IMG/VR virus record: IMGVR_UViG_3300044997_001199
Coordinates: 1-64,000 of that record
DNA: 64,000 bases
Direction: 5' to 3' (one strand)
Each line of letters opens with the position of its first letter. Position 1 is the stretch's first letter. Shown one piece after another: positions 3,068 through 54,893 of the stretch. The translations under genes were made by a program, and so were the position numbers. A model generated the notes under the pieces. It worked only from the letters and a program-made list of their open reading frames with translations. It did no database searches and was not told the origin of the DNA.

Positions 3068-3151
3068 CTTGTCAACGCAAACGGCGTTTTATGCGGAAAC
3101 CACCGCGTAGTGGCTAGAACCCACATCGGACTTCTTTAAAGGAGAAAACAA

Positions 3152-3901
3152 ATGGGACGTCCTCTCAAAATTCAAAAACTTTCCACCGGCTCGGGCAACA
3201 GCGGAGAGTCAGTCGGTGTGGATCTTGGCTTTCCTAACTTTGGAAGCCTGACCAATCCGGTCTACAACACCGCTGACACCCTCAACAGCACACAGTTTCT
3301 GGGTGTGGTTGGTGGAGCCAACCCCACAGATACCCCCAGCACCACATTTCCTCGAGTGAGAGTGATTGTCAACATACAGCTGACATCAGGATCGGGTCAA
3401 GGTGTGGCCACTGGTTACATCATCCGCCAAAAAGGTGCCCACAAGTACCTGGTAGGATCAACCACTACCGTCCAGGACGAAGGCATCGTGACTGGAAATT
3501 CCTACATCATTGCCACAGTGGGCAGCACTGACTGGACACTGTTTGGCGCACCAGCTGGCTATGCAGTGGGCACAGTGTTTACAGCCACTGCAGAAGGTTC
3601 CAACAACGGCAATGGTACCTGTAACCTAGTGGGAGTCTGCGTGCTGGATGACGATACCACACCTGCTGCAGGATTGATGGCCATTACCTATACCCTGGGC
3701 GACTCCACGGCCACTACCATCAGCAAATTAACCAACAAGTGGTTGTTGAACTGGGCCGGCGGCAGTGATTATGCTGCTACCAGTGTGGTCAATAATCAAC
3801 GCTATGCGGCCAACTTCTTCACCGACGAAGGCACAGTGATCAAGTCAGGCACACCGCAAACCGCTGTGGAACTGGCCATAGTAGACAACGTCACCTCATA
3901 A
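3152..3901 (+). CDS. Hypothetical virion structural protein
   Basis: 249-aa Thr/Gly-rich ORF, RBS AAGGAG, late promoter upstream. Confidence 0.75.
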   Translation: MGRPLKIQKLSTGSGNSGESVGVDLGFPNFGSLTNPVYNTADTLNSTQFLGVVGGANPTDTPSTTFPRVRVIVNIQLTSGSGQGVATGYIIRQKGAHKYLVGSTTTVQDEGIVTGNSYIIATVGSTDWTLFGAPAGYAVGTVFTATAEGSNNGNGTCNLVGVCVLDDDTTPAAGLMAITYTLGDSTATTISKLTNKWLLNWAGGSDYAATSVVNNQRYAANFFTDEGTVIKSGTPQTAVELAIVDNVTS

Positions 3902-45065: not shown

Positions 45066-45140
45066 TGGTACCTGGTGACGGGATCGAACCGCCGACCTTC
45101 TCCTTGTAAGGGAGACACTCTACCGCTGAGTTAACCAGGC
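45066..45140 (-). tRNA. tRNA-Val (TAC)
   Basis: Complete cloverleaf, loop CT-TAC-AA, TTCGATC T-loop, encoded CCA. Confidence 0.95.
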
Positions 45141-45145
45141 AATTC

Positions 45146-45180
45146 TAGTCGGAGTGCAAGGATTCCAACCCTACACTCCA
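45146..45180 (-). pseudogene. tRNA remnant folded as an acceptor+T-arm minihelix
   Basis: TGGAGTG-TAGGG-TTGGAAT-CCTTG-CACTCCG-ACTA; D and anticodon arms absent. Confidence 0.7.
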
Positions 45181-45183
45181 AAT

Positions 45184-45262
45184 TGGTCTCGATGGCAAGA
45201 TTCGAACTTGCGACATCCTGCTCCCAAAGCAGGCGGAATGAACCAGACTATCCTACACCGAT
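45184..45262 (-). tRNA. tRNA-Pro (TGG), first base pair mismatched
   Basis: Cloverleaf with CCTGC-TTTGGGA-GCAGG, CCA; A1:G72 mismatch. Confidence 0.88.
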
Positions 45263-45263
45263 T

Positions 45264-45337
45264 TGGTGGAGGATAACAGAATCGAACTGTTAATCTCGGC
45301 TTGCAAAGCCGATGTTATCCCATTTAACTAATCCCCC
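45264..45337 (-). tRNA. tRNA-Ala (TGC)
   Basis: G3:U70 identity pair, loop TT-TGC-AA, CCA. Confidence 0.93.
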
Positions 45338-45342
45338 AAACT

Positions 45343-45419
45343 TGGCTCCCCAGCGTGGGCTCGAACCACGGACATTCTGATTAACAGTCAGACGCATCTA
45401 CCAACTGTGCTACTGGGGA
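45343..45419 (-). tRNA. tRNA-Asn (GTT)
   Basis: TCTGA-CTGTTAA-TCAGA, full cloverleaf, CCA. Confidence 0.95.
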
Positions 45420-45425
45420 ATATTC

Positions 45426-45455
45426 TTAACTGCACTACCGCTGTACTACCTTGGA
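45426..45455 (-). pseudogene. 5' fragment of a tRNA (acceptor strand plus D arm)
   Basis: TCCAAGGTAGTACAGCGGTAGTGCAGTTAA; rest missing. Confidence 0.55.
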
Positions 45456-45462
45456 ATAAAAA

Positions 45463-45538
45463 TGGTGCCGGTTGTCGGATTCGAACTGACGACCTATCGC
45501 TTACAAGGCGATTGCAACTACCACTGTGCTAAACCGGC
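45463..45538 (-). tRNA. tRNA-Thr (TGT)
   Basis: ATCGC-CTTGTAA-GCGAT, full cloverleaf, CCA. Confidence 0.95.
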
Positions 45539-45564
45539 TTAAAACTATATATCTCTTTTATTGC

Positions 45565-45654
45565 TGGCGGAGAGTATGAGATTCGAATCTAAGTGTCCAT
45601 TTCTGAACGACGGGTTAGCAAACCGCTGCGTTAACCACTCTCGGTCAACTGTCA
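45565..45654 (-). pseudogene. Degenerate tRNA-Ser (GCT)
   Basis: Long variable arm, loop TT-GCT-AA, 3' ACTCTCC-GCCA but 5' strand TGACAGT mismatched. Confidence 0.75.
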
Positions 45655-45661
45655 AATTTTT

Positions 45662-45739
45662 AAGTAGGGCCCCGGAGGATCGAACTCCGAACCTATCCAT
45701 TATGAGTGGATTGCTCTAGACCAATTGAGCTAGGGCCCT
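45662..45739 (-). tRNA. tRNA with CAT anticodon, probably Ile2 (lysidine) rather than Met
   Basis: AGGGCCC acceptor, ATCCA-CTCATAA-TGGAT; CCA not encoded (ACTT); adjacent to tilS. Confidence 0.85.
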
Positions 45740-45781: not shown

Positions 45782-45811
45782 ATTATAACCAGTGTCTTTG
45801 ATTCTTGTCAA
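45782..45811 (-). promoter_or_regulatory. sigma70-type promoter for the tRNA cluster
   Basis: TTGACA-N18-TATAAT. Confidence 0.7.
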
Positions 45812-46397
45812 GGATTTTTCTTTGCACCATGGTAGCGATTCCAGGATTTACTTTAAGAATTTCGGGCATGACGGCATGTCGGATCTGATTACGACTGTAT
45901 CGCAGATCACGATTGCTGTGGTCTTCGTACCAGGTCACAGCGTGCCGCTGAGTCCAGGCAACCAGCTGTTGTTTGGGTGTTCTTAGGAACGGTCTCACAC
46001 AGCGTCCTCGCTGATAGTTCATGATTCTGGGCTGACCATGACACGATCCCCAGATCCAAGTTTCCACGGCATCGTCGAGATGATGGGCCAAAACCACCGG
46101 TTCGGATCCTGGCAAACGGTCAAGGAATCCATAGCGTTCGTTGCGCCAGTGTTCTTCGGGACTGATGCCCGGGGGCCTCGGTTGAGAGATTTTTCCGATG
46201 GCGAGAGGTATGTCATGCTGCGAGCAGTACGTCCTGACCGTGGCCAGGCCATGCTCACTGGCCACGGTACCGTGATCAAAAAAGGCCACCTGGGTATGGT
46301 GTCGCCGACGGAGAAAGTCCAGGGCTGCCATGGAATCCAACCCGCCTGAGCAGGCGACGACAACAGTTCTAGGCAGGGCGTTCAACAACCTGATCAT
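45783..46397 (-). CDS. tilS: tRNA(Ile)-lysidine synthetase, short form
   Basis: ACSGGLDSMA PP-loop, RNERY, LAHHLDDAVET, RPFL, W.EDHSN, RNQIRH. Confidence 0.9.
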   Translation of the reverse strand: MIRLLNALPRTVVVACSGGLDSMAALDFLRRRHHTQVAFFDHGTVASEHGLATVRTYCSQHDIPLAIGKISQPRPPGISPEEHWRNERYGFLDRLPGSEPVVLAHHLDDAVETWIWGSCHGQPRIMNYQRGRCVRPFLRTPKQQLVAWTQRHAVTWYEDHSNRDLRYSRNQIRHAVMPEILKVNPGIATMVQRKILDKNQRHWL

Positions 46398-46401
46398 GTA
46401 A

Positions 46402-46650
46402 CTACTTGCGTTCGCGCAGTTGTTGACAGTACACACAGCACCGTACTCCGGGCATGAGTCGTTGTCGAGCCTCGGGGATGTCGTCACCACATTCTTCGCA
46501 ATGAGCCAAACTGGGGAATCGTGCCTGTTCGGCTAACTGTCGCTGTACATCGGCCACGGCATTCATGCCTAGGTGTATGGCATGCAGCTGACCCATCTCA
46601 GCTTCTTCTTCGTTGTTGTAAACAAAATCATCTTTATCCATAGTTGACAT
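46402..46650 (-). CDS. DksA/TraR family C4 zinc-finger protein
   Basis: CEECGDDIPEARQRLMPGVRCCVYCQ. Confidence 0.9.
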   Translation of the reverse strand: MSTMDKDDFVYNNEEEAEMGQLHAIHLGMNAVADVQRQLAEQARFPSLAHCEECGDDIPEARQRLMPGVRCCVYCQQLRERK

Positions 46651-46789: not shown

Positions 46790-47461
46790 GTGAAACTGAA
46801 CTTTCATCCCACGGACTGTGCCGGTGTTTATAGGATCACTGTGATAGATCCGCCTATGTCGGTGTCAGAGATCGTGGCACATCTTGCTGCAGATCCAGAC
46901 TGGGAACAGCCGGTCACGCATCCTGATACTGCCCATTGGGCAGTGAAATCTCTCACAGATTGGCAGACTCACGACTCTGTGTTGCAGGATATCTGTTGGC
47001 AATTGGACAGTGCCTGTGTCAAACAGCAGATACTGGATTTAGCCAGCCGCGATCAGATATTCCAAGAATTTTGGAGTTTTCCTAACCGGTCATGCCTGGA
47101 TTCCATTACCAATACCTACGCATACTTTATACAGACTCCGGCTCATTATGAAAATCATCCATGGCATGTTGATTGCAAAAATCTGTTGCTACAGGGCATG
47201 ATTTATCTTGTGGAACAGCCCAGCAACGATCAAGGCACTTGGTTTTGTAGAGATACATCGGTTCTGTACAACAGACATGACCCGGAAACCGAGCTGCGCT
47301 TGCCAGCAGCGCCCTGGCAAGGGTGGTTGTTGATCAACTCAGATCTCAGCTATCACCGTGCCTTGAATCTCACCGAGCAACCACGTTTCAGTATAAAGTT
47401 CGGACTGCAATTCAATCTCAAACGGCCACATCCGCGGATACCTGCAACACACAGTATCTAG
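46790..47461 (+). CDS. Hypothetical protein, possibly 2OG-Fe(II) oxygenase-like
   Basis: PWHVD (HxD), distal YHRA, RFSI; TAAATA at 46780. Confidence 0.55.
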   Translation: MKLNFHPTDCAGVYRITVIDPPMSVSEIVAHLAADPDWEQPVTHPDTAHWAVKSLTDWQTHDSVLQDICWQLDSACVKQQILDLASRDQIFQEFWSFPNRSCLDSITNTYAYFIQTPAHYENHPWHVDCKNLLLQGMIYLVEQPSNDQGTWFCRDTSVLYNRHDPETELRLPAAPWQGWLLINSDLSYHRALNLTEQPRFSIKFGLQFNLKRPHPRIPATHSI

Positions 47462-47484
47462 CAAATTTCTCAAGGAAACTGTCA

Positions 47485-47850
47485 ATGTCTAGCGTTTGGG
47501 GGTACCACTTAACTCTAGATTGTCGTGATGCAAATCGAGCACTCATGATGGAACGATACAATGTTGAATGCTTCGTCAAAGAACTGGTCAGTCGAATCAA
47601 CATGGATCCAATTGGAGAGCCGTGGATCGAATATACCGCGGCCGACTGTCCAGACAAAGCCGGATTCACTGCAGTGCAGATCATCGTAGCATCCAGCATT
47701 GTTGCACATTTTGTTAACGACACTGGTGACATCTATCTTGATGTGTTCGGTTTCCGAGAATTTGACATCGACGTGGTCAAATCGGTAGTACAAGATTATT
47801 TCAAACCCAAAAACATGAGAATGAACTTTCTCACTCGTCATGCTGGTTGA
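47485..47850 (+). CDS. S-adenosylmethionine decarboxylase-like proenzyme with altered active site
   Basis: WGYHLTLDC, GFTAVQII...SIVAHF, IYLDVF..REFD; canonical ES/TS and SC motifs changed. Confidence 0.7.
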   Translation: MSSVWGYHLTLDCRDANRALMMERYNVECFVKELVSRINMDPIGEPWIEYTAADCPDKAGFTAVQIIVASSIVAHFVNDTGDIYLDVFGFREFDIDVVKSVVQDYFKPKNMRMNFLTRHAG

Positions 47851-47851
47851 T

Positions 47852-47927
47852 TGGCCCGCCTCGAAGGATTCAAACGTACGACCACTGGGTTCGAAGACCA
47901 GAGCTCTTCCACTGAGCTAAGAGCGGT
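47852..47927 (-). pseudogene. Degenerate tRNA-Arg (TCG)
   Basis: Loop CT-TCG-AA and GCCA end, but broken T stem and TTTGAAT T-loop. Confidence 0.7.
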
Positions 47928-47980: not shown

Positions 47981-48058
47981 ACGAGTAGAGGGCAGGATTC
48001 AAACCTACGGTTTTAAGGATTTGCAGTCCCTTGCATTGGGCCACTCTGCCACCTCTAC
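47981..48058 (-). tRNA. tRNA-Cys (GCA), T-loop variant
   Basis: GTAGAGG/CCTCTAC acceptor, U73, AGGGA-CTGCAAA-TCCTT; TTTGAAT loop, CCA not encoded. Confidence 0.82.
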
Positions 48059-48062
48059 GTTT

Positions 48063-48097
48063 TGTCTCCGGGGGAGGAAATCGAACCCAACACCCGC
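48063..48097 (-). pseudogene. 3' tRNA fragment
   Basis: GGGTTCGATTTCCTCCCCCGGAGACA, T-loop plus acceptor-like strand. Confidence 0.45.
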
Positions 48098-48128
48098 ATG
48101 TTTGTGCTGAGCTGGATACAAAGCTTCT

Positions 48129-48157
48129 AAAGAAAATGGCCCATCGCTGGGCCATTT
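48129..48157 (-). terminator. Intrinsic terminator after the tmRNA coding piece
   Basis: AAATGGCCCA-GCGA-TGGGCCATTT then TCTTT. Confidence 0.8.
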
Positions 48158-48467
48158 GGTCGTTCTGTTGCCAGGTGACCAACCCCGACAGATCAAGCCG
48201 CTAGGCGGAGATCCTCAGCATAAACGTCGTCATTGGCGTTTATAAGTTTTGCTAGGTTTACGACCTTCGCCTCTCGTGCTGTCTGTATCTGTACTCATTT
48301 GTCCTGTCGAAACCAAAACCGGCCCATCATAAGCATACTAGATTTTATCGATACTACCGAATAATGGGAGGGCGACTCCATCTTACACCAGTATGCTTAT
48401 GGTGGACCGGGCGAGAGTCGAACTCGCGTCCAGAACACCTTTCCTTCAACTTCATACAGCAATAACT
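48130..48467 (-). ncRNA. ssrA: Circularly permuted two-piece tmRNA
   Basis: Acceptor piece ending GTTCGACTCTCGCCCGGTCCACCA (CCA at 48400) lies upstream of the coding piece starting GGGCCGGTTTTGGTTTCGAC (48325); G3:U70; tag ANDDVYAEDLRLAA* at 48237-48193. Confidence 0.92.
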
Positions 48468-48608
48468 GTTATTTATGTATTTTTTTGAACAGTCGGCAGT
48501 CTTCTGTGCTTCTTCGTTGTACCACAGACGTCGAGTGTAGTCCTGATCGATGTCCCGAAGATACTGGTCGGTGAAATACTTCACATGACCCTTGACCAAA
48601 TAAAACAA
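48354..48608 (-). CDS. Small hypothetical protein; 3' part reads into the tmRNA, so its true end is uncertain
   Basis: MFYLVKGHVKYFTDQYLRDIDQDYTRRLWYNEEAQ looks coding; the remainder overlaps promoter and RNA. Confidence 0.4.
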   Translation of the reverse strand: MFYLVKGHVKYFTDQYLRDIDQDYTRRLWYNEEAQKTADCSKKYINNSYCCMKLKERCSGREFDSRPVHHKHTGVRWSRPPIIR

Positions 48609-48668
48609 ATTGTATGTGTCCTATACAATATTTAAAATCAAAGCCCAAAAACTAATGCGATATGTTAA

Positions 48669-52594: not shown

Positions 52595-54893
<2,299 letters not shown>

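What the first reader, a model, noticed from the sequence alone, without database searches (positions are those of the whole stretch)
48130..48475. Phage-encoded, late-promoter-driven, circularly permuted tmRNA with an unusual tag
Seen: TAAATA, acceptor piece, ~75-nt intervening segment closed by a 16-bp inverted repeat (48324-48339 with 48390-48405), coding piece, tag ANDDVYAEDLRLAA* and terminator. Established: two-piece tmRNAs occur in alphaproteobacteria and some beta- and cyanobacteria; C-terminal LAA directs ClpXP degradation. Inference: the phage supplies its own ribosome rescue late in infection, perhaps countering ribosome-stalling abortive-infection toxins; the permuted form is a host clue. 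No smpB is seen in the window.
Basis: partly seen in the sequence, partly recalled or inferred. Interest (0 to 1): 0.72.

Follow-up and report, generated by a model that had tools for sequence, protein, structure and literature searches.

The report
Phage two-piece tmRNA, beta type
A lake-water jumbo phage carries an intact two-piece ribosome-rescue RNA (tmRNA) behind a phage late-type promoter motif, which is real but belongs to an already described and, in freshwater phages, common kind.

Summary
On the minus strand at 48129-48477 lies a complete circularly permuted tmRNA gene. ARAGORN calls the tag ANDDVYAEDLRLAA. Rfam scores are 123 bits (tmRNA_permuted) and 122 bits (beta_tmRNA), against 58 (alpha), 52 (cyano) and 27 (one-piece).

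The contig is a 215 kb fragment of a contractile-tailed jumbo phage found in several lake metagenomes.

It precedes the sheath, fibre and other virion genes. Near-complete relatives encode a T4 gp55-type late sigma, so late expression is plausible but untested.

No SmpB is found in this record or in two near-complete relatives, so host SmpB must be used.

The tag is longer than the uniform 10-residue tags of the sampled bacterial beta-type tmRNAs, but it is not unique. At least 110 permuted tmRNAs turned up in IMG/VR from one capped scan, and about a dozen carry homologous long tags.

Viral genes form their own diverse group apart from the Rhodocyclales clade. They have roughly three times longer intervening segments and usually a templated CCA.

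Phage two-piece tmRNAs are already published (PMC9004378, PMC7162821).

New context: the same genome encodes ClpX, ClpP and a ClpA-like ATPase.

Verdict: a new member of a known kind, of modest interest.

The parts
48470..48477 (-). Promoter-like motif CATAAATA (core TAAATA at 48470-48475), 6 nt upstream of the conserved start of the acceptor piece. No sigma70-type -35 element.
   Evidence: Searches give the coordinates. TAAATA-containing 7-mers are the most enriched upstream words in the genome. The motif sits at the same position in 19 unique viral tmRNA genes and in none of 39 unique bacterial ones.
48400..48463 (-). Acceptor piece (the 3' half of the tRNA-like domain). It contains the conserved 5' start AUUGCUGUAUGAAG, the T-arm at 48411-48427, the 3' acceptor strand CCGGUCC at 48404-48410, and a templated ACCA at 48400-48403.
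   Evidence: Rfam alignment, coordinates, and conservation in alignment A1.
48326..48399 (-). Intervening segment of 74 nt, presumed to be excised. Its two ends (48388-48399 and 48326-48341) pair and extend the acceptor stem into one helix of about 23 bp. The interior is not conserved.
   Evidence: The viral median spacer is 82 nt against 27.5 nt in bacteria.
48129..48325 (-). Coding piece. It contains the 5' acceptor strand GGGCCGG at 48319-48325 (G3 pairs with U70), the conserved UGGUUUCGACAGG at 48303-48315, the region before the tag, the tag frame, a 3' hairpin and a U-tract.
48193..48237 (-). Tag reading frame from resume codon GCC to stop codon UGA, encoding ANDDVYAEDLRLAA.
   Evidence: Codon comparison with L111, L121 and L116 shows mostly synonymous changes.
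48134..48157 (-). Terminator-like hairpin: 10 perfect pairs and a 4-nt loop, followed by UUUUCUUU (48129-48133 and beyond). It aligns with the 3' terminal hairpin of the beta_tmRNA model.
47983..48058 (-). tRNA-Cys (GCA), the next gene downstream on the same strand. tRNA-Arg (TCG) follows at 47852-47926, and six more tRNAs lie at 45066-45739.
48629..48634 (-). A second TAAATA about 150 nt upstream of the tmRNA gene on the same strand. It overlaps a weak sigma70-like match. It could be a second promoter giving a longer leader.

Best explanation
This is an intact, functional-looking two-piece (circularly permuted) tmRNA gene of the betaproteobacterial type, carried by a freshwater jumbo myovirus.

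Shown: the gene is complete, phage-borne and well conserved.

Inferred mechanism:
1. A precursor is transcribed from a promoter that lacks a -35 element and has a TAAATA core, of the kind that precedes this phage's virion genes. So expression is probably late, through a gp55-type sigma.
2. Host tRNA-processing enzymes remove the 74-nt intervening hairpin. This leaves an acceptor piece ending in the templated CCA and a coding piece starting at G1. The two stay base-paired.
3. Host AlaRS charges it, using the G3:U70 identity pair. Host SmpB and EF-Tu deliver it to ribosomes stalled on broken mRNAs.
4. Translation resumes on GCC and appends ANDDVYAEDLRLAA.
5. The C-terminal LAA hands the product to ClpXP, which this phage also encodes itself.

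Net effect: the phage boosts ribosome recycling and clearance of truncated proteins at a stage when mRNA decay or host nuclease defences would otherwise stall ribosomes.
For: Gene identity:
- ARAGORN calls a permuted tmRNA.
- RF04321 scores 123.1 bits and RF01850 121.9 bits, against alpha 57.5, cyano 52.1 and standard 27.1.

Architecture:
- 7/7 acceptor pairs form between segments 74 nt apart, with G3:U70, an intact T-arm and an encoded ACCA.
- The same holds in all 73 unique viral relatives parsed, with 11 compensatory stem variants.

Coding selection on the tag:
- The long tags of the window, L111, L121 and L116 differ mostly at synonymous positions.

Phage context:
- Sheath and TerL lie on the same contig.
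- It is a virus record of 215 kb.
- A 100% identical copy occurs in a second IMG/VR contig, and the phage is present in at least 4 lake metagenomes.
- No integrase was found.

Promoter:
- TAAATA words are about 9-fold enriched upstream of genes, with a 19:5 sense bias.
- The motif precedes the sheath, fibre, fibre-assembly and spike genes.
- It has a fixed position in viral tmRNA genes, where bacterial genes carry a sigma70 promoter.
- gp55 homologues occur in relatives G001 and G002.

Downstream arm:
- ClpX scores 522 bits (cut-off 359) and has GYVG, IGF and GGRKN motifs.
- ClpP scores 301 bits (cut-off 249) and has the Ser-His-Asp motifs.
- A ClpA-like ATPase is also present.
Against: - There is no direct evidence of transcription, processing, charging or tagging. 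RNA-library contigs came only from relatives and do not show two pieces.
- No SmpB is found in the phage and the host is unknown, so compatibility is assumed.
- No gp55 was found in this 61%-complete record.
- TAAATA also precedes a ClpA-like gene and lies upstream of a ribonucleotide reductase gene, so it may not be strictly late.
- ClpX is absent from five near-complete ~160 kb phages that carry permuted tmRNAs, and is present in a relative without a convincing tmRNA. The tmRNA-ClpXP link is therefore co-occurrence, not a conserved module.
- The window scores 122 bits on RF01850 against 244-313 bits for bacterial genes, so it is a divergent member.
Confidence: 0.65

Rival explanations
1. The gene is a decoy or inhibitor of trans-translation. 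The phage RNA mainly titrates host SmpB or competes with host tmRNA, as proposed for the mycobacteriophage DS6A molecule that has only the tRNA-like domain, rather than tagging proteins.
For: There is no phage SmpB. A published precedent shows that a phage tRNA-like-domain-only molecule inhibits tmRNA (PMC4131195, PMC11915505). The gene is divergent from bacterial genes.
Against: The tag frame is intact, with a conserved context around the resume codon, an in-frame stop and an LAA end. Tag codons change mostly synonymously among relatives. A decoy would not need any of these.
Confidence: 0.08
2. The gene is a passenger or relic: a host ssrA captured by imprecise excision or recombination, or an attachment-site remnant, with no role in infection.
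For: tmRNA genes are common prophage integration sites (PMC9004378, PMC11915505). Two viral contigs (L089, L177) carry host-like copies nested in the bacterial clade.
Against: - The window's gene lies in a large, diverse group that is almost entirely viral, and is at most 68-78% identical to anything else.
- The bacterial sigma70 promoter has been replaced by the phage motif.
- The gene is complete and all pairings are intact.
- No integrase was found.
- The identical sequence persists across several lake samples.
Confidence: 0.07
3. The gene is a functional tmRNA but is not expressed late. TAAATA would be an AT-rich -10-like element read by the host sigma70 holoenzyme (early or constitutive), as Buchholz et al. 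proposed for the early-promoter tmRNA of phage Melnitz.
For: - Many viral relatives have TTGACA...TATAAT promoters at this position, and in some (L142, L099) TAAATA overlaps a -10 box that has a -35 partner.
- A weak sigma70-like site lies 150 nt upstream.
- The motif also precedes some non-structural genes.
- No gp55 was found in this record.
Against: - The window's copy has no -35 element.
- The motif is concentrated before virion genes.
- gp55 homologues exist in the near-complete relatives.
Confidence: 0.2

Closest known systems
Betaproteobacterial two-piece tmRNA (Rfam RF01850; Rhodocyclales such as Azonexus/Dechloromonas, Thauera, Propionivibrio; Sharkady and Williams 2004, as cited in PMC9004378)
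   Same: - Permuted gene order.
- tRNA-like domain with G3:U70.
- The conserved UGGUUUCGACAGG element.
- A tag starting with AND and ending with LAA.
- A 3' terminal hairpin.
- It is the best-scoring Rfam subtype.
   Different: - It scores 122 bits against 244-313 bits for bacterial genes.
- It falls outside the tight bacterial clade.
- The tag is 14 residues, against a uniform 10.
- The intervening segment is 74-75 nt, against a median of 27.5.
- CCA is templated, which is true of only 7 of 30 bacterial genes.
- It has a TAAATA motif instead of a sigma70 promoter.
Two-piece tmRNA of marine phage Melnitz and other aquatic phages (Buchholz et al. 2022, PMC9004378)
   Same: A complete permuted ssrA encoded by a lytic aquatic myovirus, without smpB. 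That paper counted 53 two-piece forms among 133 unique phage tmRNAs, 50 of them from aquatic phages.
   Different: Melnitz's gene is alpha-type, was assigned to an early promoter, and is linked to a glutamine riboswitch. This one is beta-type, sits behind a late-type motif, has no riboswitch match, and is carried by a freshwater jumbo phage related to PA5oct and Atu_ph07.
tmRNAs of huge phages and mycobacteriophages (Al-Shayeb et al. 2020, PMC7162821; Bxz1-like phages and phage G, PMC4131195)
   Same: A large phage that carries tRNAs and a tmRNA as part of an expanded translation toolkit.
   Different: Some huge phages also carry SmpB, but none was found here or in two near-complete relatives. 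The mycobacteriophage genes are one-piece.
Clp gene sets of Rak2-like and Atu_ph07-like jumbo phages (PMC6102473, PMC7824862)
   Same: The nearest isolates by TerL encode ClpX, ClpA and ClpP, as this genome does.
   Different: Those papers relate Clp proteins to replication control, assembly or stress. Neither mentions a tmRNA.

Membership tests
Two-piece (circularly permuted) tmRNA | Gene order is acceptor (3') piece, then intervening segment, then coding (5') piece, with the acceptor stem formed between the two pieces. | tested here: met
   ARAGORN makes a permuted call. There are 7/7 pairs between 48404-48410 and 48319-48325, and 11 covarying stem variants across 73 relatives.
Two-piece (circularly permuted) tmRNA | A tRNA-Ala-like domain: G3:U70, a T-arm with a TTCGA-type loop, and an NCCA end. 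| tested here: met
   G3:U70, a 5/5 T-stem, the loop UUCGACU and an encoded ACCA are all present.
Two-piece (circularly permuted) tmRNA | A tag reading frame that starts at an Ala resume codon, ends with an in-frame stop, and has a hydrophobic C-terminus. | tested here: met
   The frame runs from GCC to UGA and encodes ANDDVYAEDLRLAA.
Two-piece (circularly permuted) tmRNA | Score above the curated covariance-model thresholds. | tested here: met
   RF04321 scores 123.1 bits (cut-off 47) and RF01850 scores 121.9 bits (cut-off 84).
Two-piece (circularly permuted) tmRNA | The precursor is processed into two RNA pieces in vivo. | tested here: inconclusive
   RNA-library contigs come only from relatives. 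One spans the acceptor piece, the spacer and the start of the coding piece, and could be precursor RNA or DNA.
Two-piece (circularly permuted) tmRNA | It works with SmpB. | not testable with these tools
   No SmpB was found in G000, G001 or G002. The host is unknown, so a host SmpB partner is assumed.
Beta-type subtype (RF01850) | It scores best on the beta model and groups with betaproteobacterial genes. | tested here: inconclusive
   The beta model is the best by more than 60 bits. In the tree, however, the gene lies in a viral group outside the Rhodocyclales clade.
T4-type late promoter | A TATAAATA-like -10 element without a -35 element, located before late (virion) genes. | tested here: met
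   The motif here is CATAAATA with no -35 element. The motif is enriched upstream of genes and precedes the sheath, fibre and spike genes.
T4-type late promoter | A gp55-type late sigma factor encoded by the phage. | tested here: inconclusive
   Not found in the 61%-complete G000. Found in the relatives G001 and G002, with E about 1e-24.
T4-type late promoter | Late timing of transcription. | not testable with these tools
   No infection time course exists for this uncultured phage.
ssrA-tag / ClpXP degradation | A C-terminal LAA degron, and a ClpX with pore-1 GYVG, an RKH-type loop and a ClpP-docking IGF loop. | tested here: met
   The tag ends in LAA. The phage ClpX has GYVG at 144, GGRKN (RKN instead of RKH) and IGF at 259. 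The phage ClpP has the Ser, His and Asp motifs. Actual degradation was not tested.

The most novel reading that the evidence does not exclude
Freshwater phages maintain their own long-diverged lineage of beta-type two-piece tmRNAs. This lineage has been re-engineered for phage use in several ways:
- The promoter has been swapped, either to a late TAAATA type or to a phage sigma70 type.
- CCA is templated.
- The processing hairpin is enlarged.
- The tag cassette is exchangeable. L116 and L102 differ almost only in the tag, and metatranscriptome contigs share this window's tag module on different backbones.

In this jumbo-phage lineage, the long acidic tag and the phage's own ClpXP/ClpA would form a phage-controlled tag-and-degrade circuit, rather than a simple copy of the host rescue system.
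Probability: 0.25. Interest if true: 0.6.

Novelty: new member of a known kind. Interest (0 to 1): 0.36.

Why it matters
Phage-borne tmRNAs show that large phages invest in keeping ribosomes running, but nobody has shown what they do during infection.

This locus is a clean example with features that can each be tested:
- a late-type promoter;
- a long tag that is homologous across many phages;
- a phage-encoded ClpXP in the same genome.

The wider pattern seen on the way has practical value for annotation and for host prediction from tmRNA type. That pattern is a viral group of beta-type tmRNAs that is far more diverse than the bacterial clade, with swappable tags and two promoter classes. 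It cautions against reading the permuted form as a direct pointer to the host.

Tried and rejected
- **Isolated-phage nucleotide search.** A search with the tmRNA found only a 33-nt T-arm match, so there is no close isolate.
- **Late sigma in G000.** Sigma70_r2, T4 gp55 protein, phrog_234 and phrog_12791 searches of G000 gave nothing above threshold. The gene is probably in the missing ~39%, because relatives have it.
- **SmpB, integrase, ArfB.** SmpB (PF01668), integrase (PF00589) and RF-1/ArfB (PF00472) were not found.
- **Expression and processing.** RNA-library reads came only from relatives, as short contigs from libraries that may contain DNA, so they show neither transcription nor processing.
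- **Supplement look-ups.** A search for the long tag in the tmRNA database paper and the Melnitz paper found nothing usable.
- **ClpXP-tmRNA as a conserved module.** Rejected. ClpX is absent from five near-complete tmRNA-bearing ~160 kb phages, and present in G001, which lacks a convincing tmRNA.
- **Host genus from tmRNA similarity.** Rejected.
- **Possible extra tRNA.** The T-loop-like stretch at 48059-48105 is not called as a tRNA even at a relaxed threshold.

Full report
**What is there.**
Reading the minus strand between 48477 and 48129 gives, in order:
- CATAAATA at 48477->48470.
- A 64-nt acceptor piece at 48463->48400. It contains the T-arm GCGAG-UUCGACU-CUCGC, the 3' acceptor strand CCGGUCC and a templated ACCA.
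- A 74-nt intervening segment at 48399->48326.
- A coding piece that starts at G1 = 48325 with GGGCCGG. It continues through the conserved UGGUUUCGACAGG and the tag frame 48237->48193 (ANDDVYAEDLRLAA then a stop). It ends in a perfect 10-bp hairpin at 48157->48134 followed by UUUUCUUU.

ARAGORN calls a permuted tmRNA with this tag. Rfam gives 123.1 bits for tmRNA_permuted and 121.9 bits for beta_tmRNA, both far above their cut-offs. The alpha, cyano and one-piece models score 57.5, 52.1 and 27.1 bits, so the gene is beta-type.

This is the acceptor stem continued by a helix that closes the intervening segment. The whole precursor folds with a z-score of -6.1.

**Context.**
The window is the first 64 kb of a 215,330-bp IMG/VR virus record that CheckV estimates as 61% complete.
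- The contig encodes a tail sheath and a large terminase.
- It carries 14 tRNAs. Eight lie on the same strand just downstream of the tmRNA.
- A PP-loop (TilS-like) protein and a SAM decarboxylase-like protein lie nearby.
- No integrase was found.
- The nearest isolates by TerL are PA5oct-like Pseudomonas jumbo phages (53%), Phosso, Atu_ph07 and Rak2-like phages.
- IMG/VR holds at least 600 closer TerL relatives at 72-80% identity.
- The phage is present almost intact in at least four lake-water metagenomes.
- A second IMG/VR contig (L159) is 100% identical over the tmRNA and its flanks.
- A freshwater-2 RNA motif lies at 3073-3154.

**How common this is.**
One capped pattern scan of IMG/VR returned at least 119 loci, and ARAGORN finds a permuted tmRNA in about 110 of them. 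Many are on contigs of 150-190 kb.

The literature already covers this kind:
- Buchholz et al. (PMC9004378) described the two-piece tmRNA of phage Melnitz. They counted 53 two-piece forms among 133 unique phage tmRNAs, 50 of them aquatic.
- Al-Shayeb et al. (PMC7162821) reported tmRNA and SmpB in huge phages.
- The 2025 tmRNA database lists 79 phage sequences.

The kind is therefore known.

**How the viral genes differ from bacterial ones.**
- The same DNA pattern in one genome per species returned 36 permuted genes. Of these, 31 are from Rhodocyclales (Azonexus, Dechloromonas, Thauera, Propionivibrio and others), and all true calls have 10-residue tags of the form ANDE[RQ]FA[LVIM]AA.
- Only 4 of 151 sampled genomes of that order reach the RF01850 cut-off.
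- In a maximum-likelihood tree, the bacterial genes form one tight clade (98% support) that contains only two viral sequences. The window's gene lies in a large, diverse group of 71 viral sequences plus one MAG contig. Its nearest relatives are L121, L130 and L127, at no more than 68% identity over aligned columns.
- All 73 unique viral genes parsed, and the window, have 7/7 acceptor pairs and G3:U70, with 11 compensatory stem variants.
- CCA is templated in 66 of 73 viral genes and in 7 of 30 bacterial ones.
- The spacer between NCC and G1 has a median of 82 nt in viral genes (75 nt in the window) and 27.5 nt in bacterial genes.
- In the alignment with close relatives, the base of the closing helix (UAAGCA after ACCA; UGCUUAUGAU before G1) is conserved while the interior varies freely. 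This fits a processing signal rather than a functional insert.

**The tag.**
The 14-residue tag is longer than any bacterial beta-type tag sampled, but it is not unique.
- L159 has the identical tag.
- L183, L111, L198, L116, L121 and L167 carry homologous long tags of the form AND-x-[FV]-Y-x-E-D-(L)-R-LAA. L088, L118 and others carry related ones.
- Codon comparison shows mostly synonymous differences, which indicates selection on the peptide.
- The long tags sit on different backbones in the tree.
- L116 and L102 are almost identical genes. Of their 34 differences, 29 fall in the 63 alignment columns around the tag and 5 in the other 403. This points to cassette-like replacement of the tag.
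- Contigs from three RNA libraries match this window's tag region at 96-98% identity and then diverge completely. One contig matches the acceptor piece with a different spacer interior. This again indicates mosaic genes.

**The promoter.**
- TAAATA-containing 7-mers are the most enriched words in the 80 nt upstream of the 242 crude gene calls. ATAAATA occurs in 19 sense and 5 antisense upstream regions, about 9-fold over expectation.
- Of 101 TAAATA sites in the genome, 46 lie within 80 nt upstream of a same-strand gene.
- These genes include the tail sheath, the structural gene after TerL, and the tail fibre, fibre-assembly and spike-like genes. They also include a ClpA-like gene and, from inside the upstream coding sequence, a ribonucleotide reductase.
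- Upstream of the tmRNA, all bacterial genes have cTTGAA-17-CATAAT at a fixed position.
- Among 77 unique viral upstream regions, 29 contain TAAATA, and 19 of those have it exactly 43-44 nt before the T-arm, as in the window. Others have TTGACA...TATAAT instead.
- No gp55-type sigma was found in this incomplete record. Both near-complete TerL relatives encode one, with E about 1e-24.

Late expression is therefore a reasonable inference, at roughly 60%. It is not a demonstrated fact.

**Partners.**
No SmpB is found in the 215 kb record or in relatives G001 (95% complete) and G002 (89% complete, and itself carrying a permuted tmRNA with a 29-residue tag). The RNA must therefore use host SmpB, AlaRS and EF-Tu.

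Outside the window, the same genome encodes:
- ClpX at 151735-152943: 522 bits on the NCBIfam equivalog (cut-off 359), with the zinc finger, pore-1 GYVG, GGRKN in place of the RKH loop, and the IGF loop.
- ClpP at 134283-134927: 301 bits (cut-off 249), with the Ser, His and Asp motifs.
- A ClpA-like double-AAA+ protein at 92419-94695.

Clp genes are known in related jumbo phages. ClpX is a lineage trait here, present in 6 of the 10 TerL relatives searched. But it is absent from five near-complete ~160 kb tmRNA-bearing phages. The pairing of tmRNA and ClpXP is therefore co-occurrence in this lineage, not a fixed module.

**Mechanism and rivals.**
The best reading is a working tmRNA that raises rescue capacity during infection, probably late. 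The phage's own ClpXP would be available to clear LAA-tagged products.
- The decoy model is disfavoured by the conserved tag frame.
- The relic model is disfavoured by the separate viral group, the replaced promoter, the intact pairings, the absence of an integrase and the persistence across samples.
- The timing rival (sigma70-read, early) remains open.
Published speculation links defence systems to tmRNA, and that is context only.

**Host clue.**
The beta type points to betaproteobacterial, Rhodocyclales-like ancestry. However, the viral genes are a separate and much more diverse group. The Melnitz precedent, an alpha-type tmRNA in a phage of a non-alphaproteobacterial host, shows that the subtype is not a safe predictor of host.

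**Verdict.**
This is a real, complete, phage-borne beta-type two-piece tmRNA and a new member of a known kind. The late-type promoter, the long swappable tag and the phage ClpXP are worthwhile details. None of them lies outside known biology.

Noticed in passing
G000 (same genome, outside the window): 151735-152943 (-), 134283-134927 (-), 92419-94695 (-): The phage encodes a bona fide ClpX (with zinc finger, GYVG, GGRKN and IGF), a ClpP with its catalytic motifs, and a ClpA-like double-AAA+ ATPase. ClpX recurs in most TerL relatives, but not in the ~160 kb tmRNA-bearing phages.
   Followed up: partly
L116:4385-4801 and L102:3091-3498 (IMG/VR contigs); RNA-library contigs laid on window 48144-48253 and 48157-48244: Tag cassettes of viral tmRNAs appear to be exchanged. 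Two nearly identical genes differ almost only in the tag region (13 against 10 residues). Metatranscriptome contigs share this window's tag region at 96-98% identity on otherwise different backbones.
   Followed up: partly
L085, L100, L134, L187, L182, L195, L156, L181 and L201 (G002:314232-314549): Several viral permuted tmRNAs are predicted by ARAGORN to have very long tags of 28-32 residues. One is in a 317 kb TerL relative of this phage, with the tag AKTSTGETTVSGKNIKFSARTAQRQSLAV, which does not end in LAA.
   Followed up: no
window 3073-3154 (+): A match to the freshwater-2 RNA motif (RF02980, 79 bits, cut-off 49.9) lies directly upstream of the ORF that starts at 3152. This is consistent with the lake-water origin.
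   Followed up: no
window 45783-46490 (-) and 47323-47850 (+): A PP-loop ATPase (TilS-like, PF01171, E 2e-31) and a SAM decarboxylase-like protein (PF02675) lie between the two tRNA blocks, next to the tmRNA. The PP-loop protein may be a tRNA-modification enzyme.
   Followed up: no
window 48059-48105 (-): A stretch with a T-loop-like GGUUCGAUU motif lies between the tmRNA terminator and tRNA-Cys. Neither ARAGORN nor Rfam calls it as a tRNA, even at a relaxed threshold. It may be a tRNA remnant.
   Followed up: partly
window 48354-48648 (-): A second TAAATA (48629-48634) and a weak sigma70-like site lie about 150 nt upstream of the tmRNA. An 84-codon TTG-start frame (48608->48354) reads through the acceptor piece and is probably spurious. 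It is unclear whether a longer tmRNA leader is made.
   Followed up: no
window 52595-54619 (-): A 674-residue protein has FG-GAP repeats, RTX calcium-binding repeats and a serralysin-type C-terminal domain. This is an unusual secreted or adhesin-like architecture for a phage gene, and it may be a virion decoration or fibre component.
   Followed up: no
L243 / L328 (MAG 'bacterium UBP17_UBA6191', contig 55): A permuted tmRNA in a bacterial MAG scores only 101 bits on RF01850, has the tag ANDDTYLLAANA, and groups with the viral genes. The contig is probably a phage sequence binned into the MAG.
   Followed up: no
L281 / L327 (Cupriavidus numazuensis LMG 26411): A Rhodocyclales-type permuted tmRNA (244 bits, tag ANDERFALAA) occurs in a Burkholderiaceae genome, a family that otherwise has one-piece tmRNA. 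It may be a horizontally acquired second copy.
   Followed up: no
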